A DNA stretch of 64,000 bases from Bugula neritina (taxonomy: Eukaryota; Animalia; Bryozoa). Every line of letters starts with the position of its first letter. Positions within the stretch are counted from its first letter, which is position 1. A program made the position numbers and the translations under genes. The notes under the pieces were generated by a model, which saw only the letters and a list, made by a program, of their open reading frames with translations, had not been told where the DNA came from and ran no database searches. Of this stretch, positions 7,480-35,035 are shown piece after piece. The DNA lies in contig OZ037766.1 in the NCBI GenBank assembly GCA_964035545.1, forward strand, positions 26,254,343 to 26,318,342, read 5' to 3'.

Positions 7480-7945
7480 TTAGAGCAAAATGCATCCGGA
7501 TGAATCAGAACTTGGATATCGAGCCAAGAGGTCTTCAGCGCTGCAGGCACATTTCAATAACAAGATAACTCTTTTGTTATCCATTCCACTATCTTGTCTC
7601 ACTGTGTAGTGGCAGTTAGGGCTGTAATGTACCTCTTCATCGTCACGGAAGTTTTGACAGTAACAATTACGTTTTAAAATGTACTTCCTGTAAAATTTAA
7701 TAAATTTAGTTGACGTTAGAGTAACCTGTTGATAGCAACTGCCTTTTATACATTAAGGGTTTTAACTAAAGTCTCATGATGCTGGTATAAAAGAATAGTG
7801 CTCACCCTCCACGCCTTTCTGGAGCCTCATAGCGACATCTGCTGTCAGTGTGAAATCCTTCAATTTTTTTGTGGCGAGTCACTTGCCCAGAAACTGTAGC
7901 AGGCTCATCAGAGTAAGACTGGAATTTTCGGCCTGGGTTCGCCAT
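7480..7945 (-). CDS. Cluster gene A: 115-aa double H-x4-C...CxC protein ending in CaaX (CILL); coding exons 7945-7806 and 7687-7480; non-coding exon 1 with donor at 8514
   Basis: Hand-spliced: MANPGRKFQSYSDEPATVSGQVTRHKKIEGFHTDSRCRYEAPERRGG|KYILKRNCYCQNFRDDEEVHYSPNCHYTVRQDSGMDNKRVILLLKCACSAEDLLARYPSSDSSGCILL*. Phase-2 GT-AG intron shared by all six paralogs. Confidence 0.88.
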
Positions 7946-8514
7946 TTCTAGATCAATAAGAAAGTTGCTACAAAACTGATGAACCAGGTTCTATACAGCA
8001 GAAGTTATGTAATATTTTTTATTTGAACGACCACCTTAAAAATACTATTGATATGATAGAGATTAGCACTTTAAATTATTGACACAGTTATACCATGTAT
8101 AAAACTTAAACAGAATAAAGCTAAGACTCTACAGTAATAAGCTTTTTATCTACGAAGCTTTGCTGTAGATATAGCTAGTTTTTTGTTAATAAAAACTCCG
8201 ACGTTTCTCATTTATAGCACTAGTTATGGAAGAAATGGAAGAGAGAGCTGTAATTTTTTGTGCTATGCTATGTTGGACTCTAATAAAGATTTTAGCATGC
8301 ACTACTTTATTTTCCACAAAATCACTTGGAGAAAAATTAAAAATCTTACTAAACATGTGTATAGCAACTGTTTCAAAATTTTCTTTCATCAAAAATAACA
8401 AAGTACCATAATCTATTGTATAGTATAACACATAATGCAATACAATTTGCCACCCAAAATTAACATCAATATTTATAGTATTGCAATAACTAGAGCTGAA
8501 GACAAGCCACTTAC

Positions 8515-8770
8515 CTTTAATAGTTAACAGTTAGAACAGTCAAATATAGAAAGACAGAACTGTAACCAGATGCAGGTTAATACTTTTATCACAGATTCTC
8601 TCTAAATGTAGAAGCATAGAAAAGGCAGCTGCTTTTATATGCCATCTTTAGAAAACCAACTCGTATTAAATTTTTTCATGACACATAAATGTTGTGAGTT
8701 GGAATTCCAAACTATAAGCTGATCATTACAAAATCAATTGCAGTTATTTCAGCATGGAATTTCCATTAGA
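8515..8770 (-). promoter_or_regulatory. Gene A promoter and non-coding exon 1: TATAAAA 8633-8639; kB-like sites 8701-8708 and 8756-8764
   Basis: GGAATTCC and GGAATTTCC on the + strand; the proximal site is AGAAAACC (8650) versus GGAAAACC in B; donor AAG|GTAAGT at 8515/8514. Confidence 0.7.
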
Positions 8771-10258
8771 CAATAGAATAATGCATGCAGCAAACTAGAA
8801 TTCAAGTGCAGTATGTGATATACTATTATATCTCTCATGGTTCTAACTACAATCGTCTACCAGTACGCAGCAAACTAATTGCAAGAGTTTAGTATCACTG
8901 CACATTAAGATGCAGGCAATTTCATGTATGTTGGTCTGTGCACATAATCCTCAGTCTTGGTGTATGAAAAATTCATGTGAAAAGTTTCGGATATTTTATT
9001 CTCTATATTGGCTGTGAGTTAAATAGTTCAAAGTTCGATTGATCTCAGTAGTTAAGATTCTTTAAATTTAATAAAAATATTAAATTAACAACACAGTGTA
9101 TAGCCAGCAAGAAGCCAGGGTTTAAGCATTGCTTCTATCTACAGCTCATGTGTATTTTACTGCAGTTTTGCACTACAAACCAATTTCAGCATAACAAAAT
9201 AAACAGATTTTGGTGGTAGGTAGTTTTTGATGATGGCTAAACCCACAGACTAATAAACAGCTATCCTGCATAAGAATAGCATACTGACATAATAGCACTA
9301 TGGCAGACTGGCTCTAGTCAACATCTTATTACCCATCAAATTCAACAATTAGTTGTGGCAGAAAGCTATTGGCTAATCAGGTGATGCTGTGTTAGTCTAA
9401 AATCTAAATGTATTTCTACTGGAGGCGCCTACAAAATGTGAATGGTAATTTTGAGCATTATAAGCTAGACAGTATTCATATTTTGAGTTCAGTTTTTTTT
9501 AGGTAGCAGTTAAGGCATTGGGCCAAACTATATATAGCTGAATTGCACCGTAAAAAAGAAATTGTAATTGCCGTTGTTAAGTTTTGTGTTAGAATGTTAA
9601 AGATCTGTATATAGCACATTCAACATAAGTTAATTGTTGATGATTAAAGTAATTTCTATCTATAAAAAAATATAAAAGGGAAAAGTACTTTAATACAGTA
9701 AGCATATATTAGGCAGTAAAAGTTTTAAATGTTGAGGTTGCACAATTTTGAAAGTAAAATACTCTTTTATTATTCTTTTGAATAATTATACTTCAAAATG
9801 CAGTTTTTAGGTTCATCTCCACCTAGGACAGAAAACAGGATCTTTAGAAATATTATGTGTAAATTGTCCAATCTAATTATTGCATTTCAATCTTGAAATA
9901 TAGAATGGTCACAATTGCAATTTATACTGTCAAAATAGACTACATTTTTGCACATTGAAATACAAAACTACCATAACTTTATGACACTTGGAAGCAATTT
10001 GGAGTTGTTTCTACGAAGACAAACTGAAACTTCCATGACAAGGTTTGTTTAAACAAATATATTATGCATAAATAAATATTTGTGATAAGATCAAAATAAT
10101 AGCATCAGCTATATATAAGCACCCATTCTGGTGGTCAGTATTTACCCTTAAATTACTTATTTACAACTAAATAAAAACCTCCTAATTTGAAAAGGATTTT
10201 AAAGAACGAATAAAAGAAGTATTGATATAAAGTTTGCTGTCAATATGAAATCAGCCTG

Positions 10259-10757
10259 CTAGGAGATAATGCATCCACATTGATCAGGGGTTTCGGCCCC
10301 CCTGAGTGGCTTTGGATAGCGACTTAAGAGGTTTTCAGTGTAACAGGCACATTTCAATAAAAGGATCACTCTTTGGTTCTCCATCCCACTATCTTGTCTC
10401 ACTGTGTAGTGACAGTTAGGGCTGTAATGTACCTCTTCACCATCATCAAATAGTTCACAGTAACAGTCACGTTTTAAAATGTATTTCCTGTAAAATTGAA
10501 TAAATTCAGTAGACACTAGAGTAACATCCTAATAGTAACTGTTATAAATTCTACATTACTTGTTGCAAATTAGTATATAAGAGTTTTGTGCTATTGGCAT
10601 TAAAGAATAGTACTTACTCGCCACGCCTTTCTGGAGACTTATAGTGACATTTGCTGTCCATGTGAAATCCTTCAATCTTTTTGTGACGAGTCACTTGCTC
10701 AGAAGATGTAGCAGGCTCAATGGAATAGTTTGAGAACTTGCAGCCAGGATTTGTCAT
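10259..10757 (-). CDS. Cluster gene B: 122 aa, ends QCGCIIS (CaaX); coding exons 10757-10618 and 10487-10259; exon 1 donor at 11325
   Basis: MTNPGCKFSNYSIEPATSSEQVTRHKKIEGFHMDSKCHYKSPERRGE|KYILKRDCYCELFDDGEEVHYSPNCHYTVRQDSGMENQRVILLLKCACYTENLLSRYPKPLRGAETPDQCGCIIS*. Confidence 0.88.
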
Positions 10758-11325
10758 TTCTAAATCGATAAGAATATTGTTCCAAAACTGTTGACTCTAA
10801 TTCAAAACAAAAAAATATGTAACATTTTGTTATTTGAATGACTAGCTAAAAATAATATTGGGTTGATAGAGATTAGCACTTTAAAATGATGATGAAGTTA
10901 TCCCATATATAAAACTTAAAAAAATAAAGCTAAGACTCTACAGTAATAAGCTTTAACTTATCTACAAAGCATTGTTGTGGGCAATGCTAGCTTTTTGTTA
11001 ATGTAAAAGCCATTGTTTTGAATTTATAGTAATAGTTATGAGAGAAATGGTAAAGGGTTGTAATATTTATGCTATGTTAGATTCTAATTAATATTTGATC
11101 ATTTTTCACTATATTACTCAGAGAAAAATTTAAGATATTACTAAACATGTGTAAAGCAACTGTTTCAAAATCTCCCTTCATCACAAAAGTAACAAAGTAG
11201 CGTAATCGAACATAGTTATAGTATAACATATACAAGTTATATATAATGCAACACAAATGGTCACTCAAAATTAGCATCAATATTTATAGTATTGCAATAA
11301 CTAGAACTGAATACAAGCCACTTAC

Positions 11326-11570
11326 CTTTAATAGTTAGTAGGTAGAACAGTCAAATATAGAAAGAGAGGACTATAACTGAATAATTTTATCACAAATTCT
11401 CTCCATGTGCAGAAACATAGAAAAGGCAGCTGCTTTTATATGCCATCTTTGGAAAACCAACTCGTATTAGATTTTTTCATGACACATAAATAATAAGAAT
11501 TGGAATTCCAAACTATAAGCTGATCCTTACATGATCAGTTGCTGGTATTTCAGCATGGAATTTCCAGTAG
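11326..11570 (-). promoter_or_regulatory. Gene B promoter: TATAAAA 11434-11440; kB-like sites at 11451, 11502, 11557
   Basis: GGAAAACC, GGAATTCC, GGAATTTCC; homologous to the promoter of A. Confidence 0.7.
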
Positions 11571-12599
11571 GCAATAAAACAATGCATGCAGCAAACTGGA
11601 ATTTAATCCTGGGTATGCGATATACTATTGTAATATCTCTCACAGTTCTAACTACAAATACAGTATCCACCAGTACGCAACAAACTAATTGCAAGCGTTT
11701 AGTATCACTGCACATTAAGATGCAAGCAGTTTTGTTTATGTTTGTTTGATGTGCACAAATATAATTCTTAATCTTAGTCCATGAAAAATGTATGTGAAAA
11801 GTTTTGGATATTTTATTTTTTAAATTGGCTTTGAGTTAAATAGTTCCAAGTTCGATTGATCTCAGAGATTCTTTCAATTAAAAAGAAACATAAAGCTCAC
11901 AAAATTATAGTGTATAGCTGGTAAGAAGCCAAAGCTGACCCATTGCTTCTATCTACAGCTCAGCTTATGTGTATTTTGCAGTTTTGCACAGCAAATCTTT
12001 CAGCATAACAAAACAAACACTTCAAGTGATTATAGTAGGTAGTTTTTGATGATGGCTAAACCCACAGACTATTAAACAGCTATAATATTGCATAAGAATA
12101 TATAATCATAGCATACTGGCTATACTTAGAACCTTTCAACTATAGTCAGCATTTTGTAGCCAATCAAATTGTGGTGGAAAGCTGTTGGCTAATCATGCTG
12201 GCCATACAATGGGAATAGGAATTTTTGAGCATTATAAGCTAGACAGTATTCTTGATTTCAGTTCAGTTTTCCTTTAAGTAAAAGCTAAAGCATTGGGCCA
12301 AACTATAGCTGAATTGCACTGTAAAAAACAAATTTCGACTACCAATACTGAGTTTTAAGTTAGAGTGTTGGAGATCTGTTTGGAATATGGCACATTCAAC
12401 ATGAGTTCATTATTGTCTATAATTAAAGTTATTTCTAGCCATAGAAAAAAGTTAAAAGCAGTAAGTAAGTTAATATAGTCAGCATATATTATGCAGTAGA
12501 AAATGTTGAAAATTGAGGTTGTACACAATTGTAAACTTCAACTGCTCTTCTATCATTCATTCGAATAATTATATTTCAAAAATAATATGTTGGAATATA

Positions 12600-12870
12600 T
12601 TTTATGAGAATTCCCAAATGTAAAGCAAGATCTGCAGCTATTTTTAGATTAATGCAAAACATAATAGCCTGCATTTTCTGAAAGGCAGGCTTGGAAATCC
12701 AACTTGGAACATAACTTTTTGCTTGCATGTACAATATTCCATTATTGCTTGATGGAATTCCCATTGAATGATTTATGCAAGAAAATGGAAATTCCAATGC
12801 TCAAGTTCCCAATAACAACAATGACTCATCACATACAGCGCTATTCCTAATTATCACACGTGATGTTTTA
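12600..12870. promoter_or_regulatory. Distal kB/AP-1-like enhancer block, copy 1
   Basis: GAGAATTCCC 12606, GGAAATCC 12693, GGAATTCCC 12754, GGAAATTCC 12787, TGACTCA 12822; homologous to 18220-18430. Confidence 0.55.
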
Positions 12871-13516
12871 ACACTTCACAACAAACTATACTGAGATGTG
12901 AAATGTAAGGCTTGAGTTGATGCTTTACCTTTGTACATTTTTCGGTGCTTTTAGTCAATAAAAGTATTTATAGAAAACATAAACATGATTATATTTGTAT
13001 TCAAACATGGAACTATGTAACCACGTTTGTATTTTTTCAGATCAAGGCAGCCTCATGCTGCCAATAAATTTGTGGCTGAACGCTATTGGCTAACCACGTC
13101 ATGCCGTATTAGTCTAAACGAATTTTGTAGTTTATTAGTAATTTTTCTAGAATGATTATCAGCAACTTTTTGCCATTTGATATATAAATGTGTAGTCTTG
13201 AGTTTAGTAGAAGAAACATAAGGTGTTATTTTTTGTTTAACTTGTGAATAATTATTGTCTCTAATTTAATTTTAAAACCAGAAATGAGGTTTGAAAAGAG
13301 TAATCTGGTATAAGTGAATAAATTTATTGATGGTAATCAGTAATTGTAACTGTGAATGTAATTTTAAGTAATTAAAATTGACAAAACAAATTTTATAAAT
13401 GAAATCTGTACCTCTTTCATTGGCCACTCAGCATAATGCAGAATAAATGCACAATAAAGTAAATATTTTGTAGTCAAATGACATTCAAAAACAGAACACT
13501 AGGTATATTGTTATAA

Positions 13517-14237
13517 CTAATATCCTGGTTTTGGAGATCGACTCAGCAGTCTTGGATTCACACAATAGCATTTCAGCAGTAAGACAACATTATTAGTACC
13601 AGTGTCTTGCCTCACGGTATAGTGACACTGATCACTGCCATGTACTTCATCACCAGCATCAAATCTTCCACAATAACATTTACGGCGTAGAGTGTAGTTC
13701 CTACAAAATCGTACACATAGATTATATATAACACTGAAGACTAGAATACTTGTACTATTAGCACATAATTGTTAAAAGATCTTCATGATTTCAGTAACTT
13801 AATTAATCATTAGAAGGGAAATATATAGAAGCTAAAACCCGCCTAGTATATGAATGAAAAAAAATAAAAGAAATGTTATTTCAAGTGGTTGAGTTTTTGA
13901 GCCAAATGCTCAAAATATTATTTTAATAAGTATTCATATAAAAAAACACTCCTAACTTAGAATTTTTATAATTAAAGTTTAGGTTGAACAAATATTTTTA
14001 CTATTTACAGTAGTATCTGCACAATAATTATTCTATATCACATCACCTGTTGCAAATAATATTATTGAGATCTCATTTTATAGCATAGAATACTTACCGC
14101 CCATTCCACTGTGCCGGCCCATAGCAACAATTGCTGTCAGTGTGAAATCCTTCAATCTTTTTGTGTGACACAACTTGCCCAGAAACTGTGGCAGGCTCGT
14201 TAGAATAAGATGAGAAGGTGCGACCACGATTTGCCAT
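13517..14237 (-). CDS. Cluster gene C: 107 aa, no CaaX; coding exons 14237-14098 and 13700-13517; exon 1 donor about 14729
   Basis: MANRGRTFSSYSNEPATVSGQVVSHKKIEGFHTDSNCCYGPAQWNGR|NYTLRRKCYCGRFDAGDEVHGSDQCHYTVRQDTGTNNVVLLLKCYCVNPRLLSRSPKPGY*. Confidence 0.86.
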
Positions 14238-14729
14238 GTCTAAATAAGAAACAAGGTACAGCTATTTTAAAATTGATGACCATGACTTTATGCAAAAGTT
14301 TATGAAATATTTGTTTATTTATTTCAACAGCAAATATCTAAATAATTAATAAATGCTTCTTAACTTTAGTTTTGCATGATTATTTCTATTCTAAAAAAAT
14401 TACCAGTTAATGGTAATTAGCAAAATAAATGTAATTTCAAGAGCAAGCTGTTTTATTCTAAAGTAGCTTTGACTTTAAATTTCTTTGAAACAGTAACATA
14501 TAACTTGGTTGATGATGACTATCGGTAAAGTGAACTTATAAAATTATTAAAAGTTTGTGTTTCTAGAAAAAGATATATCAATATACTAGGTAGGTAATTA
14601 ACAATACAGAGATAACTAACTTAGCTAGTGTTTTCCGTATACATTGACACACATTTTTGCAACCTCATCTAAATGCAATACTTCTGCTTATACAAAATTC
14701 AATATCGCAGTGCATAGAAAGACACCTAC

Positions 14730-14960
14730 CTTCGTATGCAATACTTGTGCTTACACAGAGTTCAATATCACTGATTCTCTCCAAATGCAAGGACATTGAA
14801 AGTGCAGCTGCTTTTATATGTCCAGTTTGGAAACCCAACATGTATTAGATTTTTTATTATTATTCAAAAAGATCTGGAATTCCAATATTACTATCCTGAA
14901 TTGCATCACTTAGCCAATGCAAAGCTATTGTGACGTATTAGCATGGAATTCCCAATTAGT
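14730..14960 (-). promoter_or_regulatory. Gene C promoter: TATAAAA 14812-14818; kB-like sites at 14829, 14876, 14945
   Basis: GGAAACCC, GGAATTCC, GGAATTCCC; same order as in A and B although the spacers have diverged. Confidence 0.7.
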
Positions 14961-15504
14961 CTACAATAGAGCAATCAATGCATGCGGCAACCTATTATGT
15001 GAATAGAAGCACATATAATAGCATGACTGATGCATTGCAGTAACAGCTCCCTGAGTGCCCTGTATATGTATATTAGAAACGAATGAATTTCTACCTACTG
15101 CGGGCCATATTACCTTCATCTGCTGCTCTAACCATACATCAAATGCCAGGTTTTATAATCAGATCATATAACAACTGGTATACAGTTTTTTGCCCGCGAG
15201 TTGAAGGCCTGTATATAATACTATATATATAATACATTCAACATAAGTGAATATATTTCTAACTGTAACAAAAAACAAGAGTTATAAGTAGTTTATTACA
15301 GTCAGATTATGCTGTTAAAATTTTGAAAGTTAAGGTTACACAATTTCGAAATTAAAACCCTCCTTTATCACTCATTTGAATAGTTATACAAATAAAAATG
15401 CAGCTTTAGGTTTATATTTAGAGTTGGAAGTGTCGGCGAAGTGAATGAAATTCTGCTTTTAAATCATTTAACTTAAGAAGGATTCAGTTACGGGTACACC
15501 TGAA

Positions 15505-16425
15505 CTACATTATTTCACATCTGCTCTGTTCAGGATCGGCATCTATCAATATTGGATGATTACAGTAACATTTTAGCAGCAAGAATGTGCGATTATTCCC
15601 TGTGTCCTTGATAGTGACATAGTGACATTGTGGGCTATAATGCAACTCGTTGGCGTCATAAAAATTCCCACAATAGCAGTAACGTTCAAGATAGTAACCC
15701 CTGTAAACAGTAAAGACAGTAGAAATACGATACATATTATTACCGTTTTTTTCTATAAGCAGAAGGAGGTAGGTTGGGGTGGGAGATCAGCAGATTTAGA
15801 TAATGGCTGTGTAATTGCTATATACTCACTAAAAGGCACCAAGTTATATGAATTACTAAAAGGTCTGTTATGCAATTACAGCAATACTCATTGAGATTAT
15901 GTTGCTCTGTAGCTATAGTTGCTGTTCGGAAATTTAATATAACATTTTATTCTGCTAACCAGGTCAAAGTTCAAATGAGTAAATTAATTTTATAAGTTAC
16001 CTACAGAGTTTACTTGTTTTGTCAATTAGCGGAGAGCATTTTTTGTAGGCACTTAAAACGTTATAATTGACATAAACTTGCTTGCTAAAAAGAATTTTGT
16101 TGCTTTTTAAATTTGTATTGTCATGAAGCAAAATAAATTTGTTCTTTTTTTCTGTTGTCTCATAAATAGTATTTCAGACAGAAATTATGAAAAAATATTG
16201 AATTATTATTAATAATTTAACAAACATGGGATTAAGTTGCTTAGTCCATCAAAATGCATGGTGACTGAGCATTGGCCTATATACATACCCGCCAGGGCTC
16301 ATCCATTTTTTGTAGCAACAATTATTATTAGTGTGGAAAGTTTCAATCTTTTTGTACTTTGTAGGTGAACAGGTGTCCAGACCATCTTTATAATGTTTAC
16401 ATTCTTTAGGTCCAGGATTTGCCAT
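15505..16425 (-). CDS. Cluster gene D: 110 aa, ends RCEIM (CaaX-like); coding exons 16425-16289 and 15700-15505; exon 1 donor at 17653
   Basis: MANPGPKECKHYKDGLDTCSPTKYKKIETFHTNNNCCYKKWMSPGG|GYYLERYCYCGNFYDANELHYSPQCHYVTIKDTGNNRTFLLLKCYCNHPILIDADPEQSRCEIM*. Confidence 0.87.
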
Positions 16426-17653
16426 GATATCTAAATCAATGTAAATGGTCCATGTTGTCATACTAATAGTAATCAATAATTTGTAGTTCTGTAGAGTACT
16501 ATACTGGAAAAAATAATTGACAGCTTAGTTATCTAGTAGGTTCAAGAAATTGGTAGCCACATCACTTATGGAGTATTCTAAGTTAAATTAAAAACATATT
16601 TATATGTATTATGTACTGTTCTGCAACCATTTTACAGTTAGCATGCTTTAGTGTATGAAATTGAGTAATTGATGTGCATGCAAGTATTTATTATTGTTAC
16701 AGACTTATTACAATATATTACATCAAAAGTTTTGTAATTGTACATGTATCTACTATCTATATAACACAGCAATATATAAAACAGTTTATACATATACATT
16801 ATACATTTATATATAATACAGTTTATTAAGCAAAACATTGTGCTAGAAGTGTATTAGCTTTCTCTTCTATAGACATATCAGCAAAATGTTGTATTAGATT
16901 AAACAAATGAATATTTTTTAAAGGTGTAGTGTATTGTTTTGCTATAAATAATGCTGATGATAATATAAGTTTGGCTTTGGTCTTGCTGTTTGATTTAGTT
17001 GGAAATGAGATGAGCAAATAATAATTTTGAAAGCAAAATATTCAAACAAATTGATAATAATAAGAATACATGACTATATTTTAAAAAATATAGAAGCTTT
17101 TAGCTGATAGGCTAGCATTTTGTTTAACTTTTGGTTGATTATTATATGCATCAAAACTTCCATGTCAATTACTCAAATTATATGTATATATATGTAAACA
17201 AATCCATTATAAAAATTAAATTAATTTGTTCTCATCTCATTATTTATAACTGGCTAAGTCACAGCCTCGTTCAAAAAGTTGTATTAAACAAACATGCTTA
17301 TGGTATTCTAAGAACTCCACTGGTAACATGCTAGATATTGAAACAATATTATGTCAAAGGTGCTGACTATAATGTTAACATACTCATTATATAGAGACAA
17401 ACATAAAAAGTTATTTGAGTTTTACAGATTGGTGCATAAAAACTAAAAACCTGCATGTATATTATATAGATTGCAAGTTAATATAAATATTAGTAAATAA
17501 CATACAAAATAATTTGTTTTTACCACAAAATTGTCACTGTATTTTCTTTTTTATATTATTATATATATAATAGTGCGAGATTAAATGTAGTAAACAATAG
17601 GTTTGGTAGCTAATTTGATAGACATATATGCTAAGATATAAAGTATTACTTAC

Positions 17654-17830
17654 TGAATCAGTTAGCTACTTGTTCTAAGCAAGATATACTCCAACAAAAA
17701 TTTTTTTTCATAAACTTAGAAGCAATAGGAAGATGTTGCTTTTATACTACGCTGTTGGAAATCCAGTTTGTAAAAAAAGTTTCCACTGATTAACTTTGGA
17801 AATGGGAAATTGCTTACTTGGGATTTCCAA
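17654..17830 (-). promoter_or_regulatory. Gene D promoter: TATAAAA 17740-17746; kB-like sites at 17757, about 17777, 17820
   Basis: GGAAATCC, AAAGTTTCC, GGGATTTCC; closely similar to the promoter of E. Confidence 0.7.
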
Positions 17831-18219
17831 TAACAGCCGTTAGAATTGCATGTTTCATGGATTTTTAAATTTTCATTAGTAATAACAATAATAGTATTCT
17901 GTTTTGTTGTACAACACGCACGCTCATAACACATTTATTAGAGTTTACAATTTTCGATAAGTTGCAGCTGATAGGAATAAAAAACTCATAAATAGATTGA
18001 AAAACTTTTATCACACATTGGCATTTGCAAATTTACACTGCTTCAGCTATAAATAACGTGGTTCAGGTAACAATATAAGAGTAACATTGTGTCAACCTGC
18101 ATTTAATATAATTATGTATTTATAAACGTTCCATTATCACTGTAATTTTATGTCATTATTATGGTATAAACTATGATATTACTCTAGAATTGTTTTTTAT
18201 ATTAAACGCACGTTTACCA

Positions 18220-18430
18220 CCATGCTTTTCTGAAAGGCAGGCTTGAAAATCCAACTTGTAACATAAGATTTTGCTGGCATGTGCAATATGCAATTATAGC
18301 TGGATGGAATTCCCATTAAATGCTTTATGCAAGAAAATGGAAATTCCCATGCTCAAGTTCCCAATAACAATCATGACTCATCATAAACTAAGCTATTCCT
18401 AATTATCACATGTGATGTTTTAACAGTTCA
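18220..18430. promoter_or_regulatory. Distal kB/AP-1-like enhancer block, copy 2
   Basis: GGAATTCCC 18306; GGAAATTCCC 18339 (GGGAATTTCC on the - strand, full kB consensus); TGACTCA 18374. Confidence 0.55.
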
Positions 18431-19359
18431 CTGCATACAGTGTTAAAGCACAAATAATATATAAGAATTATATTGCTTTAATTGTGAACATTAATGTTAC
18501 TTAACTAATTAATAATGGCAATAAACATGTGCATCCATCAGTTATTCGGTAAAAACTCATTTTGAAAATAACTTTTGTATTCTTATTGCAACTTACAAAT
18601 ATTTATAAATATGTTTCTAATCTTTGTTCAAACATAAAAACTGATAGCCATGTAGATGTTAATAGCAGTTAAACTCTCATAACTGCGTTATAAAAGTTAT
18701 TTTAATTCTTATGAAATAATATTACAAAGCATAGCTCATAAAACTAGTCCTTTAGTAAAAAGATAACAACATCTGATGTATGTAATCAGCAATTAAACTT
18801 CTTCTGCTTTGCTAATGCTAACAAGGGATCAAAGGTCAGACTATTTTATACTTGAAAAAATTATAATATGCACATAAATTCTGTGTGCTTGAAGTGTGTG
18901 GACTGTCCCATTTAATCAATGTGTTGCAGCTTTCAGTTGTAAGTAATAACTGGTAGGAAAAGTGTTGATTATATCATGTATGTAGGGGACACTGAAACTT
19001 TTATTGAATTATATATAATCATATTATAATATGCAAGGCATTTATAACAGTAAACTTCAAAAAATCAATGTGTGGATTTCAAATACAGTTTATTTGGCTA
19101 ATATATTATTCCATATTTAGTTTTTTGCAATATTTTAAATGCTGTTAACTTGCTTTTGTTATCAATTTAACATGCTATGTATTTTGCAGTTAAAATGATA
19201 TTTTCCAAAAAGTGTATACATTTAAAGATTTAATAATGTTTTAAAAACTAGCAAAAATTTATGAAAACACATTCAAAATTACAATTTATAACTTGATATA
19301 TCACATATTTTAAACAAAATTTTTTAAAGAATCAAGAGGAAACGTTAGATGAATATGCT

Positions 19360-20165
19360 TTAGACAAAGTCCGTAGTCTGGCATTTGCAATTTGAAACAA
19401 AGTAGGTTTGGCCAGTGCGGCGATCTTTATATCCAATGTAGTTACAATCTGGGTGGTAATGTTGCTCTTCAGCCCCATTAGTATAATTCCAGCATTCACA
19501 TCTCCTCACCAGGTAATATACTTTACCATACCATGGGCTAGAATTTTAGAAACTAACTTTTTAAACCATCTTGTGTTTTACATGATTCTAAGACTGCATA
19601 CATGACACAAAGTTTTTGGCACATCAAATGTTCACTAGTATCCTAATATACAAACTTGTGGCAACATCTAATTTTATTAACAAACAGAAGTGTTCGATGT
19701 TATTGGCCGAGAGCATAAACTTATCAAAATCTTTAATATTTGAATATAATTAATCTGATACCAAATAATCAGAATATGACAAGCTTAATATATATCATGT
19801 TTTGCATTGAATAAGAAATTACCTTAAATATTATTTATATCTTATATTTATTATCTCATTATCTTAATTAGGATTCAGAAGTTAAATCTTAGCCTTCCTA
19901 TACTAGATAGGAAATACACTTCTCAATAAAATTTATTATCTGGCAAAAAATCATTTAAATATATTATAAGATAGTTATAGTTAAAATAAGGGTATTCTGT
20001 AACAGCATTATTGAGTTCTACTCACTCGTCAACAGACTTTGATTCGTAAGAGCAGCTGGAAGCAGTGTGGGGTCCTTCAACCTTCTTTCTGGGATGAATA
20101 GTTGATTCTTTGCTTTCACGGGTGTTAACATAATAGTTGCTTGGCAAGGTGGGTGTGAAAGCCAT
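19360..20165 (-). CDS. Cluster gene E: 105 aa, ends TTDFV; coding exons 20165-20026 and 19537-19360; exon 1 donor at 21096
   Basis: MAFTPTLPSNYYVNTRESKESTIHPRKKVEGPHTASSCSYESKSVDD|PWYGKVYYLVRRCECWNYTNGAEEQHYHPDCNYIGYKDRRTGQTYFVSNCKCQTTDFV*. Confidence 0.86.
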
Positions 20166-20188
20166 ATCTCTGGGTTAACTGTAATAAT

Positions 20189-20190
<2 letters not shown>

Positions 20191-20266
<76 letters not shown>
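20191..20266. repeat. (TA)n microsatellite just inside intron 1 of gene E
   Basis: Direct observation. Confidence 0.97.
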
Positions 20267-20269
<3 letters not shown>

Positions 20270-21096
20270 TACTATAAAGCTTTGTTTTCATGTGTAAATT
20301 TATTTGTATTTTAACTTAGAAATGTAAACTTACTTTTCATGCAAAAAATACTATTTTGATAGAAATGATTTTTTTAGATATAATATCAATATGAAAAAAT
20401 AGAAATGCTTCTGCAATTATTTTTATATATGCATCTTCACAATTAGTTAATTTTTCATTGTGACTAACTAAATTTATTGCCACCATTCCTAACCGAATTT
20501 TATTACAGCTTACAGCTGAAGATTTTTTTACAACCATAACATCACGATTCAAGTATATAAAAATAGTAACTACATTGTAAATTAGTAAATATAACTTTTT
20601 ATGTAATAACTTCTAATCTCTATATTGCTCAAACGATAATATGTATTTCAACCTATGAACATTATTATACATTATAAAGTTACATTAGGATTCAATAATC
20701 TTAGAGCTGCCAAAGAAGCAGCTGCATGCTCTCAACAACTTATATCAAGCTGAAAGTTTTCTATTTCCTTCTAATAACTTCACTTCATTATATACGAGGC
20801 ATTTAAATAATATGTTCACTGTGATCATTATCAGGATGACCGTAAGATAACACATAACTTGAGTTTCATGAATTAGTGCATCCTGCTGGGATACCACATG
20901 CCCACAGATTAAACAGAGTAGTATAGTGAAATATATATTAGATACTGCTACATATTATGCAAAACAAATATTGATTTACTATATATTTTAGTTAAATTTA
21001 CCAGAGTATGACATAACATATGTTTAAGAATAAGCAGAGTTTTAATAAACAAGTATTAAACCCTAATTTAATGTAGAGATATAAAATATTACTTAC

Positions 21097-21340
21097 TGAA
21101 TGAGTTATAGCTACTTGTTCTAGGCAAGATACTTTAGCAAACTTTTTTTCATAAATTAAGAAGCAATGAGAAGATGCTACTTTTATACTACGCTGTTGGA
21201 AATCCAGTTTGTATAAAAAAGTTTCCACTGAAATTTGTTGACTTGGGATTTCCAACAACAGCCATTGCATCATAGCTTGATGGAATTCCTAATAAATGTT
21301 TTATGCAGGAAATGGAAATTCCAATGCTCAGGTTGCCAAT
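21097..21340 (-). promoter_or_regulatory. Gene E promoter: TATAAAA 21181-21187; kB-like sites at 21198, about 21218, 21245, 21282, 21314
   Basis: GGAAATCC, AAAGTTTCC, GGGATTTCC, GGAATTCC, GGAAATTCC; the last two are the distal enhancer block joined directly to the core promoter. Confidence 0.7.
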
Positions 21341-21831
21341 AGCAACAATGGCAGAACATACTCAACTTTTTCCAAGTTGAGCTCCCATTGAGTAACTGAG
21401 TTACAGCTTTCAGTTGTAAGTAATAACTAGTTATATTTATGAAATGTGCTGATCAAGTCATCTATGTTATAGTGGACATTGAAAACTTTATTGAGTTATA
21501 TATGCATAATCATAATATTATTATGCAAGGCCTTCATAACAGTAGGTAAATTTAGAAAAAATCATGTATAGATTTCAAATACAGTTTCTTTGGCTATAAT
21601 AGATCATTTAAATTCTTGTATTAGGCTATTATAAATTACTTTAAATTGCTTTTATCAATAATCTAATACATTCTATATTTTCAGTTAAAGCTCTGTGTTT
21701 CAAAAAATTATATACATGATAAGCTGGCAAATTACTTTTTATGAAAACATATACAAGTAGGTGACAAGTTAAGAAAGTGCATCTTTTATACTTTAAAAAA
21801 ACGTCAAGAGACAATATTAAATGAATATGTT

Positions 21832-22618
21832 TTACACAAAGCTTTTAGCCTGGCATTGGCAATTCAAAACAAAAAAGGTATGTCCGGAGCGGCCATCTTT
21901 ATATCCGGTGTAGTGACAACCAGTGTCGCCGTGCTGCTCTTGAGCCTCGTCGGTATATCTCCCGCAGCCACATCTTCTCACCAGATAGAACTTCTGATTG
22001 TAGCATGGACTAAAAGTTATGAGAATAGCTTTTTTAATAATCTTGTGATTTACGTAACTATATAAGCAGCACACTTGACACAGAATGTTACTGGCACATC
22101 AAATGGTCACTATAGATGTATGCTAATATCGTGCTAACTCCTGGCAGTTTGTTAAATATTGCGGTAGTTATTTGCATTAACTTGTCAAAATTCTCAATAC
22201 TTGAAGAGAATTAAGCTAACACCAAATAAACGGCATATGAAACGTTTATGTTTTCATTGAATAAAAAATTATCTTATAAAATATGATACAAGTTTTATAT
22301 CATTTACAGTTTACACAAATTTATGATTCAGGCAGAAGTTAGATTTTAGCTTTTTAGTGTAGATAGAAGATAAATTCCTCATTAAAATTTAGTATGTGGC
22401 ATAAAAAAACATTCAACTATTTTATAAAGTAGTTATAATAGTTGAAATACAACATCATAATTGAGTTCTACTCACCCGCCAATAAGCTTTGATTCATAAG
22501 AGCAGCTGGCAGCAGTGTGGGGCCCTTCAACCTTTTTCCGGGAATGAATATTTGACGACTTTGCGCTGTCGAGGGTGTCAACGTAATAGTTATTTCTCAA
22601 ACTGGGTGTGTAAGCCAT
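21832..22618 (-). CDS. Cluster gene F: 106 aa, ends AKSFV; coding exons 22618-22476 and 22009-21832; exon 1 donor about 23254
   Basis: MAYTPSLRNNYYVDTLDSAKSSNIHSRKKVEGPHTAASCSYESKLIGG|PCYNQKFYLVRRCGCGRYTDEAQEQHGDTGCHYTGYKDGRSGHTFFVLNCQCQAKSFV*. Confidence 0.86.
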
Positions 22619-23254
22619 TTCTGTGCCGTAACTGTAATAAATGACAGCCATGCTTACTTGAGAGTTTGATTAACATATGTAATTTTATTTGTAATTTATA
22701 CCCATGTATAACACATGTGGTAAGTTATTTTTATATTATAACTCAGTATTTTAAACTTTCTGCGCAGATAAAAATAAGAATTTAATACAAAGCAAAACTT
22801 AAAAATTATTATTGAAAACAAAAATAGTATGGTATTACAAATATTAAAATGAATATATTATTTAGAATTTGCCATGTTAACACTATTAGCTAAACAGTGT
22901 ATCTGTTTTTAACTGAATTTTTTCTACTTGTTTATAGTCTTAGTTTATATTAAAGCTGTAAAGGTTTACTAATTAAAAAATTTTGAACATACAAAAATAA
23001 TATTCACAGTTGCAGAGCAACAGAAATGATTTTCTTTTGTAAAAAGCTGCAACCTCTTCAATTTAACTCAAAAAATTGTAAGTGACTATTTAATATCATG
23101 TCTTAATGTAGCTGACAATTTGTTTGCTATACAAGATACTTAGATAATAATACATGTTAACACTACGAGCTGCATACTGCAGTGTTGAAAATATTTTTCA
23201 GAAAAAGTAAATCAGTCATTGAAAGTCTAAAAATAATACAATTATTTTACTCAC

Positions 23255-23400
23255 TGTGTTGTTCAAGACTCTGATGCTGGATAGAAACACTCTATTTTCA
23301 GTTATGGCGTAGCAACACATCATCTCCTCCTTATATACTCGCCTGTTGGAAAACCAGTTTCAAATCCCACAAACTTTTTTTGCCGTTCTGGATTTTCCAG
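23255..23400 (-). promoter_or_regulatory. Gene F promoter: TATATAA 23331-23337; kB-like sites at 23348 and 23390
   Basis: GGAAAACC 10 nt from the TATA box; GGATTTTCC. Confidence 0.65.
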
Positions 23401-25690: not shown

Positions 25691-28600
25691 CTAGTCCCTC
25701 AGTTTCCCTGCTACCTTATAGTTTTTGTAGGAAAGGGCTACTTTCCTTACTACGCCATCCTTGCTCGGATATACTTGATGTACTCGAGCTAGTTTATACT
25801 GATTACGCAGCTGACTTGGATCCATAACAACTACAACATCTCCCACCTGAAAGTTCCGTCTTGGGGTATGCCACTTTTGGTGATGAATCAGTGTGGGTGC
25901 ATACAATTCGGTCCACTTCCGCCAGAAGTCATCTGAGACCGTATTTACCAGAGCCAGTCGCCCGCCACGAATGTTGACAAATCGAGTTAATGCCAACAGG
26001 AAAGAATCACTGTCATATCCGAAAACTGCTTCGATGTGTGCTGCTCGTAAACTGATGTCTGTGAACATTCCTCCATAAGCTTTGCTCGAAGTTCTAGTCT
26101 GTTTTTCTCCTCTCACAATATTTGGACCAAAAAGATCTATCATTACATTGTTGAACGGCGGTCCGGTCGTTAGTCGTTCTGTAGGTAGACTTCCCATCAG
26201 TTGATCAGTAAAGCGAGGTTGTTTGAGTCGACACATTTGGCATGATGTTACTATGCCCCTAGCAACCTTAGATCCCTGCATAGTCCAAAACTCTTCTCGG
26301 AATCTTGCGAGTGTTGCATCTCGGCCATGGTGATAGCTGTCTGTATGTGCCTGCCGCATTGCCAAGTAGGTAAAGTAGTGAGTGGTGGGAAGGATTGATT
26401 GCGTGTGCGTTTTAATCGCTGTCATGGGGTTATGCCTTAGGAGTCTACTGCCTACTATCCATAATCCACTCTCTGTCTTGATGGGGTGAAGTCTTGTATA
26501 TTTCCCTTTAATCTTGTTCAACTCGGAATCTATAGTATGTTGTACCTGCTTCAGTAAGTAGAGTTTGGTCTGCCGTAGATCTTCCACGGTGATGAGATCA
26601 GATCGGATTCCCTTAAAACTTTTGTACTTGAAGATGTTGCGAACTCGAGCTATTGTCCATGTTAGACTCTTGAGACTGCTGAAATTTTCATATTTAACAA
26701 ATGATTGGACTTCTGTTGAAGCAGTGACGGTGTAAACTATTTTCTTCTCTCCAAAGACAAGCTCATTCGAGTCAGATGGCGATTTTATATCCCACTGATC
26801 CTCAGGCAGATAGAGAAAATTTGGGCCTCTCCACCATTCACTCGCAGGTCCAATGTCATTGACAGGCTTCCCTCTTGTAAGCCAATCTGCTGTGTTTTCC
26901 TTGCCACTTACCCAGTGCCAGCAGCTCATATCTCCATTGGTTGCTCCCTGAATTTCTCCAACGCGTACACCCTCGTAAACATGAAACCTTGTTGACTTCT
27001 TTTGGAGCATCTTGAGCACTGTTTCAGAATCTATAAGCTGATAAACTTTCTCAAACTTATAGCGCATTTCAGTCTCGATAACTCGTCTGCCTCTCTTTGA
27101 CAATACGGCCGCATTGAGTTCTAGTTGAGGAATCTTTAGTTGTTGTTTCATGGGTGCTATACGACATTTAGCTAAAATCAATGCACACCAGTATGTTCCA
27201 TCCTGCCTTTTCCATCGCACATATGCACTGAATCCATAGGCTATTGCGCTGGCGTCAGAGAATATCACTAGGATAGGTAATCCCACAGCATCCTTAGGAC
27301 GCAGACATCTAGGATATTGATGCTCAGTAAGGGAGAAGATATCTCTAAAGACTTGTATCCATTTCCTGCTCATCTCTGTAGGCAGTTGATCATCCCACTC
27401 AAGTTTTTGTTCCCATGTGTCTCTCAGCAGAAGTTTTGCCTTCAAAGTAAATGGTGAGAGAATGCCAAGTGGGTCGTAGATTTTCATTGTCTGCTCTAAT
27501 ACCATCCTTCGGGTGAGTATGTCTGGAATTGATTCGGGTATTTGGGCTATGGTTAAATCTGGCTGTGTGTAAGCTCCTTTCTTTTTGACAGAAAAATTTA
27601 TTCTAGCCGGGAATGAGAGAACATCTGTTTGGGGCATCCATTTAACACCAAGTACATGGGTGTTGTAGTCTTCATATTGATTTTCAGCATCTGTACTGTT
27701 GTTATTATCCCCACTGAAGAGCCAACCTTTAACTTTGAATCCGCATCTCTTCAGTACAGAGTCGGTATCTGCCGCTACCTGCAGGGCATCATCCTTGAGT
27801 GGAAAAGAGTCCACTATATCATCTACATATGTTGACCTCTTCAAAAGTTTTGCTACTCTTGGAAAATCCTTGTGAAACAGATCTGCTGTTTTGTAAAGAG
27901 CCTCTGTACTAATTGCTGCAGCAGGTCGATCCCCCATATTGACCCTCAGAATAGTATAGACATCTGGCTTTCTGTCTTCCATATTCCGCCACAAGAAACG
28001 ATGAGTGTGTTGCTCAATCTCCCTTATAAATATTGAATTGTACATCTTCTTAATGTCAGCTACTAGTGCTACAGGTTCCTCTCGCCAGCGAAGCAAAATG
28101 CCTAACAAATCATTGAGATAGGAATCTGGACCTTTGGCTAAACAAGAATTCAAGGATGTTCCTTTGTATGTTTGGCTGGAATTGAACACTATTCGCACTG
28201 GTGTTGATGTTGATTTGGGATTCTGAACGGCTAAATGGCTGAGATAGTAAATAGGTCCATTCCAACTTCTCAGCTCCTCCTCATCCAGTTTATGAGCTAC
28301 TCCGCGATCCACCATGTCTTCGATCTGGTTATTGTATCTCTTGCTCCATTCAGGGTCCTTTCGGAGAGTTCGTTCAGTGTTGCGTAAAGTGGACAATGCG
28401 GCTTGGTAGTTATTTGGTAGAGTAGAAGGATCCCTTATCCATGGATAGGCTGTAATCCACCTTTCGTTGCTCTCATCATATTCTAGGTTAGAACGTATCA
28501 TCTGAAGTTCTTGCTCCTCTTTGAATGAATAGGTATGTCCCACTACTGGACATTTTCCACATTGGCAAGCTCCACATTGTGGCTGAATTTCTATGCCCAA

Positions 28601-31321: not shown

Positions 31322-31344
31322 GTCAGCCTCAGCAATATTGGTAC

Positions 31345-31795
31345 TGTATCGGTTTGTGTTTGTGTCTGGTTGCAAGATATGCTTTAACTACTAGCCAACT
31401 TGGCAACAGGTTTTCGAGTTTATTAACTGTCAAATCGTACCCTATAAAATGGGAAACATTAGAAATTGTATAAATAAGTAGTCACAATATAAATCAAAAT
31501 TCAGAGGAACACTATGAATATTACAGAACCAAAAAATTGACATGAACTATTGTAATTCTAATAAACTTACAATATTGATGCGTGGATAAAAATCTTAGCC
31601 ATCACAATACCGAAACCGATAGTTTGTCCATACAAAGTGTGTAAATATGGCGGTTTGATCATGATACACTGACTCATGCAGTACAGTGAATGAACTAGCT
31701 CTGCCAGCTAATAGTAGCTTTGGTGAAAGCTTTTGAAGCTTGAAAGCTTTAATGATTGGCTGCCTGCCAATACTTCTGGGTGGCATACCAATACA
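31345..31795 (-). repeat. 5' LTR (451 bp)
   Basis: Direct repeat of 24939-25389. Confidence 0.96.

Positions 31796-34249: not shown

Positions 34250-35035
<786 letters not shown>

What the first reader, a model, noticed from the sequence alone, without database searches (positions are those of the whole stretch)
7480..23400. Six-gene tandem family of small double His/Cys-module proteins that I cannot assign to any known family
Seen: six same-strand units share one architecture (non-coding exon 1, ATG exon with 137-143 coding nt, phase-2 intron, terminal exon). They give intact 105-122 aa proteins. All contain KK[IV]E-x-x-H-x4-C-x-Y-x(15-19)-C-x-C, a 9-10 aa linker, then a second H-x4-C-x-Y-x(16-18)-C-x-C. 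The 8 His/Cys and the 2 Tyr are invariant, while residues between them vary widely between the A-D and E/F subgroups. There is no signal peptide. Inference: two HCCC zinc-binding modules, each with a variable hairpin, in a cytosolic protein. Tandem expansion, surface divergence and kB-rich promoters together fit a lineage-specific inducible defence or stress effector family. The six-frame track misses it because the ORFs are split.
Basis: partly seen in the sequence, partly recalled or inferred. Interest (0 to 1): 0.93.

Follow-up and report, generated by a model that had tools for sequence, protein, structure and literature searches.

The report
Bryozoan two-hairpin His/Cys mini-protein genes
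Six neighbouring genes in the bryozoan Bugula neritina encode small intracellular proteins made of two copies of a short hairpin that probably holds a zinc ion. They belong to a larger family that matches no described protein family or fold, and their function is untested.

Summary
Six minus-strand genes (7480-23400) each have an ATG exon of 137-143 coding nt, a phase-2 GT..AG intron and a terminal exon, and give intact 105-122 aa proteins. All carry KK[IV]E-x-x-H and two H-x4-C-x-Y...C-x-C modules. The unsplit module occurs six times in the window and never in shuffles.

The two modules are homologous (hhalign E 1.3e-5). Across 36 modules only H, C, C and C are invariant. The genes are syntenic with a divergent Bugula assembly, have indel-free exons, and show dN/dS of 0.2-0.5 in most pairs (0.8-1.0 for gene C against its orthologues).

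The family is larger than six: the genome gives 22 profile matches at E ≤ 1, 16 of them at E ≤ 1e-4, on four chromosomes. One subfamily also occurs in another, unidentified species. The scan had already noted this family elsewhere in this genome.

Pfam, PDB sequence profiles, a 1.8-billion-protein HMMER scan, Foldseek, VIA-align and the ESM Atlas gave no credible relative.

The proteins have no signal peptide. Three of the six end in CaaX boxes that are conserved in the orthologues. Rel/NF-kB-like sites are about 20-fold enriched in the promoters.

Not shown: transcripts (no RNA run was available), metal binding, induction, or any function. The reading "two zinc clasps in a cytosolic protein" is well supported as an inference. 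"Defence effector" is speculation.

The parts
7480..7945 (-). Gene A coding part: ATG exon 7945-7806, intron 7805-7688, terminal exon 7687-7480. 115 aa, ends in CILL (a geranylgeranyl-type CaaX box).
   Evidence: The orthologue in L001 is 89-90% identical in the exons with no indels. dN/dS is 0.33.
10259..10757 (-). Gene B coding part: ATG exon 10757-10618, terminal exon 10487-10259. 122 aa, ends in C-G-C-I-I-S (a farnesyl-type CaaX box with a further Cys upstream).
   Evidence: Orthologue P0001 is 81% identical over the terminal exon. dN/dS is 0.49.
13517..14237 (-). Gene C coding part: ATG exon 14237-14098, terminal exon 13700-13517. 107 aa, no CaaX box.
   Evidence: There are two orthologous copies in L001, with dN/dS 0.80 and 0.99.
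15505..16425 (-). Gene D coding part: ATG exon 16425-16289 (137 nt), terminal exon 15700-15505. 110 aa, ends in CEIM (a farnesyl-type CaaX box).
   Evidence: P0004 and P0010, from Bugula-associated JGI contigs, keep CEIM.
19360..20165 (-). Gene E coding part: ATG exon 20165-20026, terminal exon 19537-19360. 105 aa, ends in ..TDFV.
   Evidence: E-F paralogue dN/dS is 0.31.
21832..22618 (-). Gene F coding part: ATG exon 22618-22476 (143 nt from the second Met of the open frame), terminal exon 22009-21832. 106 aa, ends in ..KSFV.
8515..8766 (-). Gene A promoter and predicted non-coding exon 1: GGAAATTCC (8764), GGAATTCC (8708-8701), a proximal TGGTTTTCT site, TATAAAA at 8639, and an exon-1 donor GTAAGT at 8514.
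   Evidence: This is a prediction only; there is no RNA evidence.
11326..11567 (-). Gene B promoter and predicted exon 1, with the same grammar as A: proximal TGGTTTTCCAA at 11459-11449, TATAAAA at 11440, donor at 11325.
14730..14955 (-). Gene C promoter and predicted exon 1: GGGAATTCC, GGAATTCC, proximal TGGGTTTCCAA at 14837-14827, TATAAAA at 14818.
17654..17765 (-). Gene D proximal site TGGATTTCCAA (17765-17755) and predicted exon 1, which ends at the GTAAGT donor at 17653. Intron 1 is about 1.2 kb.
21097..21324 (-). Gene E promoter and predicted exon 1: GGAATTTCC, GGAATTCC, GGAAATCCC, proximal TGGATTTCCAA at 21206-21196, TATAAAA at 21187, donor at 21096.
23254..23400 (-). Gene F promoter and predicted exon 1: GGAAAATCC at 23398, proximal TGGTTTTCCAA at 23356-23346, TATATAAGG, donor GTGAGT at 23253.

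Best explanation
These are six intact, tandemly duplicated members of a larger, so far bryozoan-only gene family. Each gene encodes a hydrophilic protein of about 110 aa with no signal peptide. The protein has a disordered N-terminal tail of about 25-30 residues that ends in KK[IV]E. This is followed by two homologous modules of about 30 residues joined by a short acidic linker, and then a variable C-terminal tail.

Each module is a beta-hairpin. Its base is most likely clasped by one zinc ion, bound by the His and Cys of H-x4-C on the incoming side and by the C-x-C at the end of the returning strand. That would give two Zn per protein.

Three paralogues (A, B, D) are probably prenylated at a conserved CaaX box and so tethered to the cytosolic face of membranes. 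C, E and F are not.

All six share a promoter with Rel/NF-kB-like sites next to the TATA box, so they are probably co-regulated by a Rel-family factor, which the genome encodes.

Shown: gene integrity, selection, internal duplication, the ligand-only invariance, motif enrichment, and the absence of any known relative. Inferred: zinc binding, prenylation, Rel control. Speculative: a role as inducible intracellular adaptors or effectors in defence or stress.
For: - Gene models and intact frames.
- Synteny: an orthologous cluster in a second Bugula assembly is followed by the same TSP1-repeat gene.
- Exons have no indels against A and B orthologues, while introns have 9-35 gap columns.
- dN/dS is 0.22-0.49 for most pairs and 0.30-0.41 in the modules.
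- The module pattern occurs 6 times against 0 in shuffles.
- Module 1 and module 2 profiles align in register, with probability 80% and E 1.3e-5.
- In 36 aligned modules from both positions and all subfamilies, the only invariant columns are H, C, C and C.
- The AlphaFold model is all-beta. In the whole-protein model the hairpin turns lie midway between the second and third ligand, and in the single-module model the strands are 12-19 and 26-33, starting and ending on those ligands.
- No hydrophobic N-terminal segment; proteins are hydrophilic with pI 6.5-8.5.
- CaaX ends CILL, CIIS/CTIS and CEIM are kept in the orthologues even though C-tail dN/dS is 1.16.
- GGAA(N)TTCC occurs 15 times against 0.67 expected, 12 of them in the cluster. 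TGGDTTTCCAA occurs 6 times against 0.08 expected, five of them about 10 nt upstream of a TATA box.
- Rel homology domain exons are present in the genome on C9 and C1.
Against: - No transcript evidence could be obtained.
- Model confidence is only moderate (mean pLDDT 56.6 for the whole protein, 70-84 in the core, 71.8 for one module), and I could not inspect side-chain geometry.
- No metal-binding family or fold was matched, so zinc is inferred from the conservation pattern alone.
- In the more distant C7 subfamily, the first module as annotated in P0018 has Tyr where the His should be.
- Rel-like sites are short AT-rich palindromes. No bryozoan Rel binding specificity is known to me.
- dN/dS of 0.8-1.0 for gene C suggests relaxed constraint there.
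Confidence: 0.55

Rival explanations
1. They are metal-handling proteins rather than metal-stabilised ones. The His/Cys sites would bind and release Cu, Zn or Cd reversibly, making these cytosolic or membrane-tethered buffers or chaperones. This would be analogous to the plant heavy-metal-associated isoprenylated proteins, in an animal known (from my own knowledge) to foul copper-treated surfaces.
For: C-x-C and His/Cys ligands, a cytosolic location, prenyl tails on three paralogues, and tandem expansion. My knowledge of HIPPs and of copper tolerance in Bugula comes from memory and was not tested here.
Against: There are only 6-10 Cys per ~110 aa. The ligands sit at fixed structural positions at hairpin bases, which is typical of structural sites. 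No metal-response-element analysis was done. The promoters carry Rel-like sites, with no obvious metal-responsive grammar.
Confidence: 0.12
2. They are small nucleic-acid-binding zinc fingers of the WRKY-GCM1 structural type. Each module would be a beta-sheet finger with ligand spacing like C-x4-5-C...H-x-H, and the proteins would act in the nucleus.
For: The spacing H-x4-C-x17-21-C-x-C parallels the WRKY pattern, with the last two ligands two apart on an extended strand (my knowledge of WRKY structures). Two WRKY domains appear among weak Foldseek rows (2ayd E 1.3, 5w3x E 2.2). pI is mildly basic in several members.
Against: The Foldseek probabilities are 0.07-0.09 and TM about 0.2, which is noise. 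VIA-align gives no WRKY, GCM or FLYWCH row. No Pfam hit appears even at E 10 for 19 members. There is no WRKYGQK-like strand. CaaX tails point to membranes, not chromatin.
Confidence: 0.1
3. They are disulfide-stabilised peptides exported without a classical signal peptide, acting as extracellular antimicrobial or signalling molecules.
For: The family is Cys-rich, small, tandemly expanded and has Rel-like promoters, which resembles many secreted immune peptide families.
Against: There is no signal peptide or hydrophobic segment. The invariant His in each module is not explained by disulfides. CaaX processing is cytosolic. The Cys count differs between paralogues (6-10).
Confidence: 0.07
4. They are gene-prediction artefacts or decaying pseudogenes: conserved-looking open frames with no product.
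For: No RNA evidence is available. dN/dS is near 1 for gene C against its orthologues. One C6 relative carries stop codons.
Against: Six of six frames are intact with canonical splice sites in the same phase. Exons are indel-free against indel-bearing introns. dN/dS is 0.2-0.5 in most comparisons, across saturated dS. The ligands are invariant. An independent annotation of another assembly calls the same spliced proteins.
Confidence: 0.03

Closest known systems
WRKY-GCM1-type beta-sheet zinc fingers
   Same: Four ligands are arranged as a pair four residues apart, then a beta-hairpin of about 20 residues, then a pair two apart at the end of the returning strand. The metal site sits at one end of a small antiparallel sheet. 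This is a pattern-level comparison from my knowledge plus the models.
   Different: The ligands are H,C / C,C rather than C,C / H,H(C). There is no WRKYGQK or equivalent DNA-contact strand. No sequence, profile or fold match reaches significance. There are two modules per protein and lipid-anchor tails.
Heavy-metal-associated isoprenylated plant proteins (HIPPs)
   Same: Both are small cytosolic metal-binding proteins that end in a CaaX prenylation box and are expanded into multigene families.
   Different: HIPPs use a ferredoxin-like HMA domain with a CxxC site. Nothing here matches HMA. Only three of the six genes have CaaX. This is an analogy only.
Rel/NF-kB-driven tandem families of small immune-induced genes in insects (for example Bomanins)
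   Same: Both are clusters of short, fast-diverging paralogues that share promoter-proximal Rel-type sites.
   Different: The insect families are secreted peptides with signal peptides. These proteins have none and appear intracellular. Induction has not been tested here.
Ras-type C-terminal membrane-targeting signals
   Same: CaaX ends with X = L, S or M. Gene B has a further Cys two residues upstream, like a palmitoylation second signal. These are read directly from the sequence and are conserved in orthologues.
   Different: There is no GTPase domain. The tail is attached to a His/Cys hairpin protein.

Membership tests
Any Pfam family | A hit above or near the gathering score | tested here: not met
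   The exon peptides of the window, five full-length orthologues and 19 family members were scanned at E up to 10. This gave only scattered single hits with E ≥ 0.018, and no family was hit by more than one member.
WRKY-GCM1 zinc fingers | Ligand pattern C-x4-5-C ... H-x-H/C on a four-stranded sheet | tested here: inconclusive
   The spacing is similar but the ligand identities differ (H-x4-C ... C-x-C). The models show a hairpin with ligands at its base. Coordinates could not be inspected.
WRKY-GCM1 zinc fingers | A significant sequence or fold match to a member | tested here: not met
   Foldseek gives WRKY rows at E 1.3-2.2, probability 0.07-0.09. There are none in VIA-align and no Pfam WRKY, FLYWCH or GCM hit.
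WRKY-GCM1 zinc fingers | A conserved N-terminal DNA-contact strand (WRKYGQK or equivalent) | tested here: not met
   The strand before the first ligand reads KK[IV]E-x-x-H in module 1 and is acidic (..EE-x-H) in module 2.
Zinc ribbon | Two CxxC knuckles at the turns of two hairpins | tested here: not met
   There is no CxxC in any member. The ligand pairs are H-x4-C and C-x-C.
Metallothionein | About 30% Cys, few or no aromatic residues, clustered C-x-C/C-C/C-x-x-C | tested here: not met
   There are 6-10 Cys in 105-122 aa, an invariant aromatic residue two after the second ligand, and predicted regular beta structure.
NHL/PD40 beta-propeller repeats | Profile similarity to a propeller blade | tested here: not met
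   The single-sequence phmmer hits P0006 and P0007 (E about 1e-6, summed over 4 repeats) vanish with the family profile, where hhalign probability is 0.3%.
CaaX-prenylated proteins (a feature, not a family) | Cys at -4, aliphatic at -2, and a terminal residue that selects FTase or GGTase-I | tested here: met
   A ends in CILL, B in CIIS and D in CEIM. The orthologues end in CILL, CTIS and CEIM. The modification itself cannot be tested with these tools.

The most novel reading that the evidence does not exclude
The family is a previously undescribed zinc-clasped double-hairpin fold. It would form a Rel/NF-kB-inducible set of intracellular effectors or adaptors in bryozoans, with paralogues sent to different compartments by different C-terminal tags (geranylgeranyl, farnesyl plus palmitoyl, or none). 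That would be an intracellular counterpart to the secreted immune-peptide clusters of insects.
Probability: 0.2. Interest if true: 0.8.

Novelty: new variant of a known kind. Interest (0 to 1): 0.55.

Why it matters
Bryozoan innate immunity and stress biology are almost unstudied at the molecular level. This family has three features that make it experimentally approachable:
- a compact repeated module in which only four His/Cys ligands are invariant;
- lipid-anchor tags that differ between paralogues;
- a shared promoter that is statistically strongly enriched in Rel-type sites.

If zinc binding and induction are shown, the family would add a new small metal-binding fold and a first candidate Rel-controlled effector set in the phylum. 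If not, it remains one of many orphan families in a poorly sampled lineage.

Tried and rejected
Sequence searches that found nothing outside the family:
- Pfam on exon peptides, full-length orthologues and 19 members at E up to 10 gave nothing recurrent.
- PDB sequence profiles of the whole protein and of the single module gave 0 hits at E up to 10.
- phmmer of D's terminal exon against 1.8 billion representatives found only Bugula relatives, plus NHL-repeat proteins. These proved spurious with the family profile.
- Two profile searches of 5.8 billion proteins found only Bugula neritina proteins and unnamed JGI/ENA/Logan contigs.
- The ESM Atlas by features gave no usable hit for P0001 or P0018.
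- A JGI metagenome scan with an A-D profile matched six patterns, none confirmed.

Fold searches that found nothing credible:
- Foldseek PDB: best E 0.37 for the whole model and 7.0 for the single module.
- Atlas by shape: TM ≤ 0.39.
- BFVD: best E 0.18.

RNA evidence:
- The run search returned one DNA-like run.
- Laying that run showed contiguous genomic contigs. The only joints came from a contig of the paralogous gene, not from splicing.

Literature:
- Two full-text searches identified the genome papers but nothing on this family.

Full report
**What is in the sequence**

The region is AT-rich eukaryotic DNA (about 30% GC). All six units are on the minus strand.

For each unit, an open frame starting with ATG ends at a GT[AG]AG or GTATG donor in phase 2. 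Downstream, a pyrimidine-rich AG acceptor opens the frame that runs to the stop. The ATG exons carry 140, 140, 140, 137, 140 and 143 coding nt. Total coding lengths are 348, 369, 324, 333, 318 and 321 nt, giving products of 115, 122, 107, 110, 105 and 106 aa.

Every product contains KK[IV]E-x-x-H-x4-C-x-Y, then 15 (A-D) or 19 (E/F) residues, then C-x-C. A linker of 9-10 residues follows, and then H-x4-C-x-Y-x16-18-C-x-C. The first module is split by the intron and the second is not.

The unsplit pattern occurs exactly six times in the six-frame translation of the 64 kb window, once per gene. It occurs in none of 50 shuffles.

**Which organism, and are the genes real?**

The terminal exon of gene B finds only hypothetical proteins of Bugula neritina, at 78-81% identity. 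The window's assembly is 216,009,554 bases, which matches the 216.00 Mb chromosome-level B. neritina genome described in PMC11480708.

The database proteins come from the older draft, GCA_010799875.2. Its contig (L001) holds an orthologous cluster: A-like, B-like, two C-like and D-like genes, followed by a TSP1-repeat gene. A TSP1-repeat exon also lies downstream of gene A in the window, near 1499 on the minus strand. The cluster is therefore syntenic.

Synonymous divergence between the two assemblies is 0.13-0.24, so they are different lineages of the species complex. That makes the comparison informative:
- A and B exons have no indels against their orthologues, whereas introns have 9-35 gap columns.
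- dN/dS is 0.33 (A), 0.49 (B), and 0.80 and 0.99 (C against its two orthologues).
- dN/dS is 0.22-0.32 for the paralogue pairs whose dS is not saturated.
- By region, dN/dS is 0.44 (N-tail), 0.41 (module 1), 0.36 (linker), 0.30 (module 2) and 1.16 (C-tail).

These are coding genes under moderate purifying selection. I see no sign of diversifying selection on the hairpins. The large differences between A-D and E/F reflect age, since their dS is saturated.

**Transcripts**

The run search returned a single run with 97% of the sampled words, which means genomic DNA. Laid on 15450-21449, it gave contiguous genomic contigs. Its only joints came from a contig of the paralogous gene laid on the wrong copy. 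The splice junctions and the non-coding exon 1 therefore remain predictions.

Several things support them indirectly:
- The splice phase is conserved in all six genes.
- The independent annotation of the draft genome calls the same spliced proteins.
- A conserved block upstream consists of Rel-like sites, a TATA box, about 70-110 nt, and then a GTAAGT-type donor.

The acceptor of the ATG exon is ambiguous in A and B, where two candidate AGs exist. In gene A, either choice puts a TAA in frame upstream, so the ATG at 7945 stands as the start (sequence).

Every predicted exon 1 contains an upstream ATG. In gene C this ATG would be in frame and would add 23 acidic residues that do not look like a signal peptide. 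This matches the longer model P0009 in the draft annotation.

**The family is larger than six**

A profile of the terminal exon finds 22 matches at E ≤ 1 in this genome, 16 of them at E ≤ 1e-4:
- the six genes here;
- one gene on C5 at 6.04 Mb;
- three on C6 at 14.53 Mb, with in-frame TAA codons inside two of the matches;
- two on C5 at 3.67 Mb;
- two on C7 at 14.73 Mb;
- five on C7 at 11.38-11.43 Mb;
- one on C2, 0.25 Mb from the window;
- two weak hits.

The distant members keep C-x-C ... H-x4-C-x-[YW] ... C-x-C, with longer linkers.

The C7-type subfamily also occurs on short ENA metagenome contigs. These match this genome only across the exon, at 74-82% nucleotide identity. They therefore come from another species that I could not identify.

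The scan's earlier notes s1-456749 and s1-451063 describe members of this same family in other windows of this genome. I treated them as leads only. My own genome search independently shows those copies.

**Anatomy of the module**

Profiles of module 1 and module 2 align in register, ligand on ligand, with probability 80% and E 1.3e-5. MAFFT also spontaneously placed exon-1 module halves on module 2. The protein is therefore an internal duplication.

In an alignment of 36 modules, covering both positions, all subfamilies and three sources, the only invariant columns are H, C, C and C. An aromatic residue (Y or W) two after the second ligand and a hydrophobic residue in the returning strand are nearly invariant.

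AlphaFold2 gave two models:
- Orthologue P0001, with a 19-row alignment, has mean pLDDT 56.6 but 70-84 in the core. It shows seven beta-strands and disordered tails.
- Module 2 of gene B, with the 36-row alignment, has pLDDT 71.8. It shows a single hairpin with strands at 12-19 and 26-33, starting on the second ligand and ending on the third.

This puts the second and third ligands opposite each other at the hairpin base, with the His five residues before and the last Cys two after on the same face. It is the geometry expected for one tetrahedral His+3Cys site per module.

This is an inference. The tools do not expose coordinates, AlphaFold does not model zinc, and nothing was measured. The invariant His argues against a purely disulfide-based design.

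**Where the proteins act**

There is no hydrophobic N-terminal stretch. The maximum 12-residue hydropathy in the exon-1 peptides is 0.22. The proteins are hydrophilic, with pI 6.5-8.5 in the orthologues.

A, B and D end in CILL, CIIS and CEIM. Their orthologues end in CILL, CTIS and CEIM, even though the C-tails otherwise evolve at dN/dS of about 1.2. From established CaaX rules, which I hold from memory, A would be geranylgeranylated and B and D farnesylated. B has an extra Cys two residues upstream, like a palmitoylation signal. C, E and F lack CaaX.

Taken together, this argues for cytosolic proteins, some of them membrane-tethered.

**Promoters**

GGAA(N0-1)TTCC occurs 15 times in the window against 0.67 expected, with no shuffle above 3. 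Twelve of these are in the cluster.

TGGDTTTCCAA occurs six times against 0.08 expected. Five of these lie about 10 nt upstream of the TATA box of genes B-F. Gene A has a one-mismatch version.

This grammar is shared by subgroups whose coding dS is saturated, so it is conserved by selection. The genome encodes Rel homology domains on C9 and C1. Control by a Rel factor is a reasonable hypothesis, but induction by infection or stress is untested.

**Comparison with known families**

Nothing was found:
- No Pfam family at E up to 10 recurs among members.
- No PDB chain matches either profile.
- The exhaustive HMMER scan found only Bugula relatives and NHL-repeat proteins. The family profile rejects the NHL proteins, with hhalign probability 0.3%.
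- Foldseek against PDB: best E 0.37 for the whole model and 7.0 for the single module.
- Atlas by shape: TM ≤ 0.39.
- BFVD: best E 0.18.
- Atlas by features: no usable hit.

The nearest resemblance I can name is geometric. The WRKY-GCM1 type of beta-sheet zinc finger has a ligand pair four residues apart, a hairpin of about 20 residues, and a pair two apart at the strand end. Two WRKY domains appear among the noise-level Foldseek rows. However, the ligand identities differ, the DNA-contact strand is absent, and no test reaches significance. I therefore do not file the family there.

By function, the closest analogies are the prenylated metal-binding HIPPs of plants and the Rel-driven clusters of small immune genes in insects. 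Neither is homologous.

**Verdict**

The finding is a real, intact, selected gene cluster of an undescribed family. The structural reading (two zinc-clasped hairpins in a cytosolic protein) is well founded but unmeasured. The promoter signal is statistically strong.

The functional reading (defence or stress effector) is a hypothesis.
- Orphan families are common in poorly sampled phyla.
- There is no expression or functional evidence.
- The scan has already reported the same family elsewhere in this genome.

I score it 0.55.

The window's exons were never joined for a search or a fold. Exon references and full-length database orthologues were used instead.

Noticed in passing
window 25691-31375 (-): An uninterrupted 1894-aa open frame carries Pao retrotransposon peptidase, DUF1759, DUF5641 and an integrase zinc-binding domain. 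It looks like an apparently intact BEL/Pao LTR retrotransposon, about 2.3 kb beyond gene F's promoter.
   Followed up: partly
window 12691-12795 and 18250-18347 (-): Two further clusters carry the same Rel-like grammar (GGAATTTCC, GGGAATTCC, TTGGATTT[CT]CAAGCC) but have no TATA box and no family exon downstream. They lie about 1.2 kb upstream of B's promoter and 0.5 kb upstream of D's. They could be relics of lost paralogues or upstream enhancers.
   Followed up: partly
window 8617, 11418, 14796, 17711, 21152, 23323 (-): Every predicted exon 1 holds an upstream ATG. In A-C the short upstream frame begins with a conserved M-x-L-H-[LM]-E-R-I. In C it would be in frame with the main ORF, adding 23 residues, as in the draft-genome model P0009.
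   Followed up: partly
G000 C7:11.38-11.43 Mb, C7:14.73 Mb, C5:3.67 Mb, C2:26.56 Mb (L004-L008); L009-L011: More distant family members have longer linkers and Trp in place of the module Tyr. The C7-type is highly conserved and also occurs on ENA metagenome contigs (ERZ1740059, ERZ1740068, ERZ1740070). Those contigs match this genome only in the exon, at 74-82% identity, so they come from another unidentified species.
   Followed up: partly
L001 versus window 7480-14237: The two assemblies labelled Bugula neritina differ by dS 0.13-0.24 in these genes, and the draft has two C-like copies. This fits distinct cryptic lineages of the species complex.
   Followed up: partly
window 32966-33262 and 34283-34736: There is an AC-rich minisatellite (periods 29-156) and a pure (AC)n array of about 227 units. 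These explain the strong GC skew at 34-36 kb.
   Followed up: no
window 50006-50999 (+): Two open frames match the ubiquitin-like Rad60-SLD_2 domain. They are probably exons of a ubiquitin-fold gene.
   Followed up: no
window 33498, 34952, 35929: Three further GGAA(N)TTCC palindromes lie outside the cluster, around the microsatellite region. Their significance is unknown.
   Followed up: no
window ~1499 (-): A thrombospondin type-1 repeat exon (W-S-x-W-S-x-C) lies downstream of gene A. This matches the TSP1-repeat gene that follows the cluster in the draft assembly.
   Followed up: partly
window 15450-17650: The only public run that could be laid shows almost no contig cover over gene D and its intron 1, against about 130-fold further on. 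The tool warns that such holes prove nothing.
   Followed up: no
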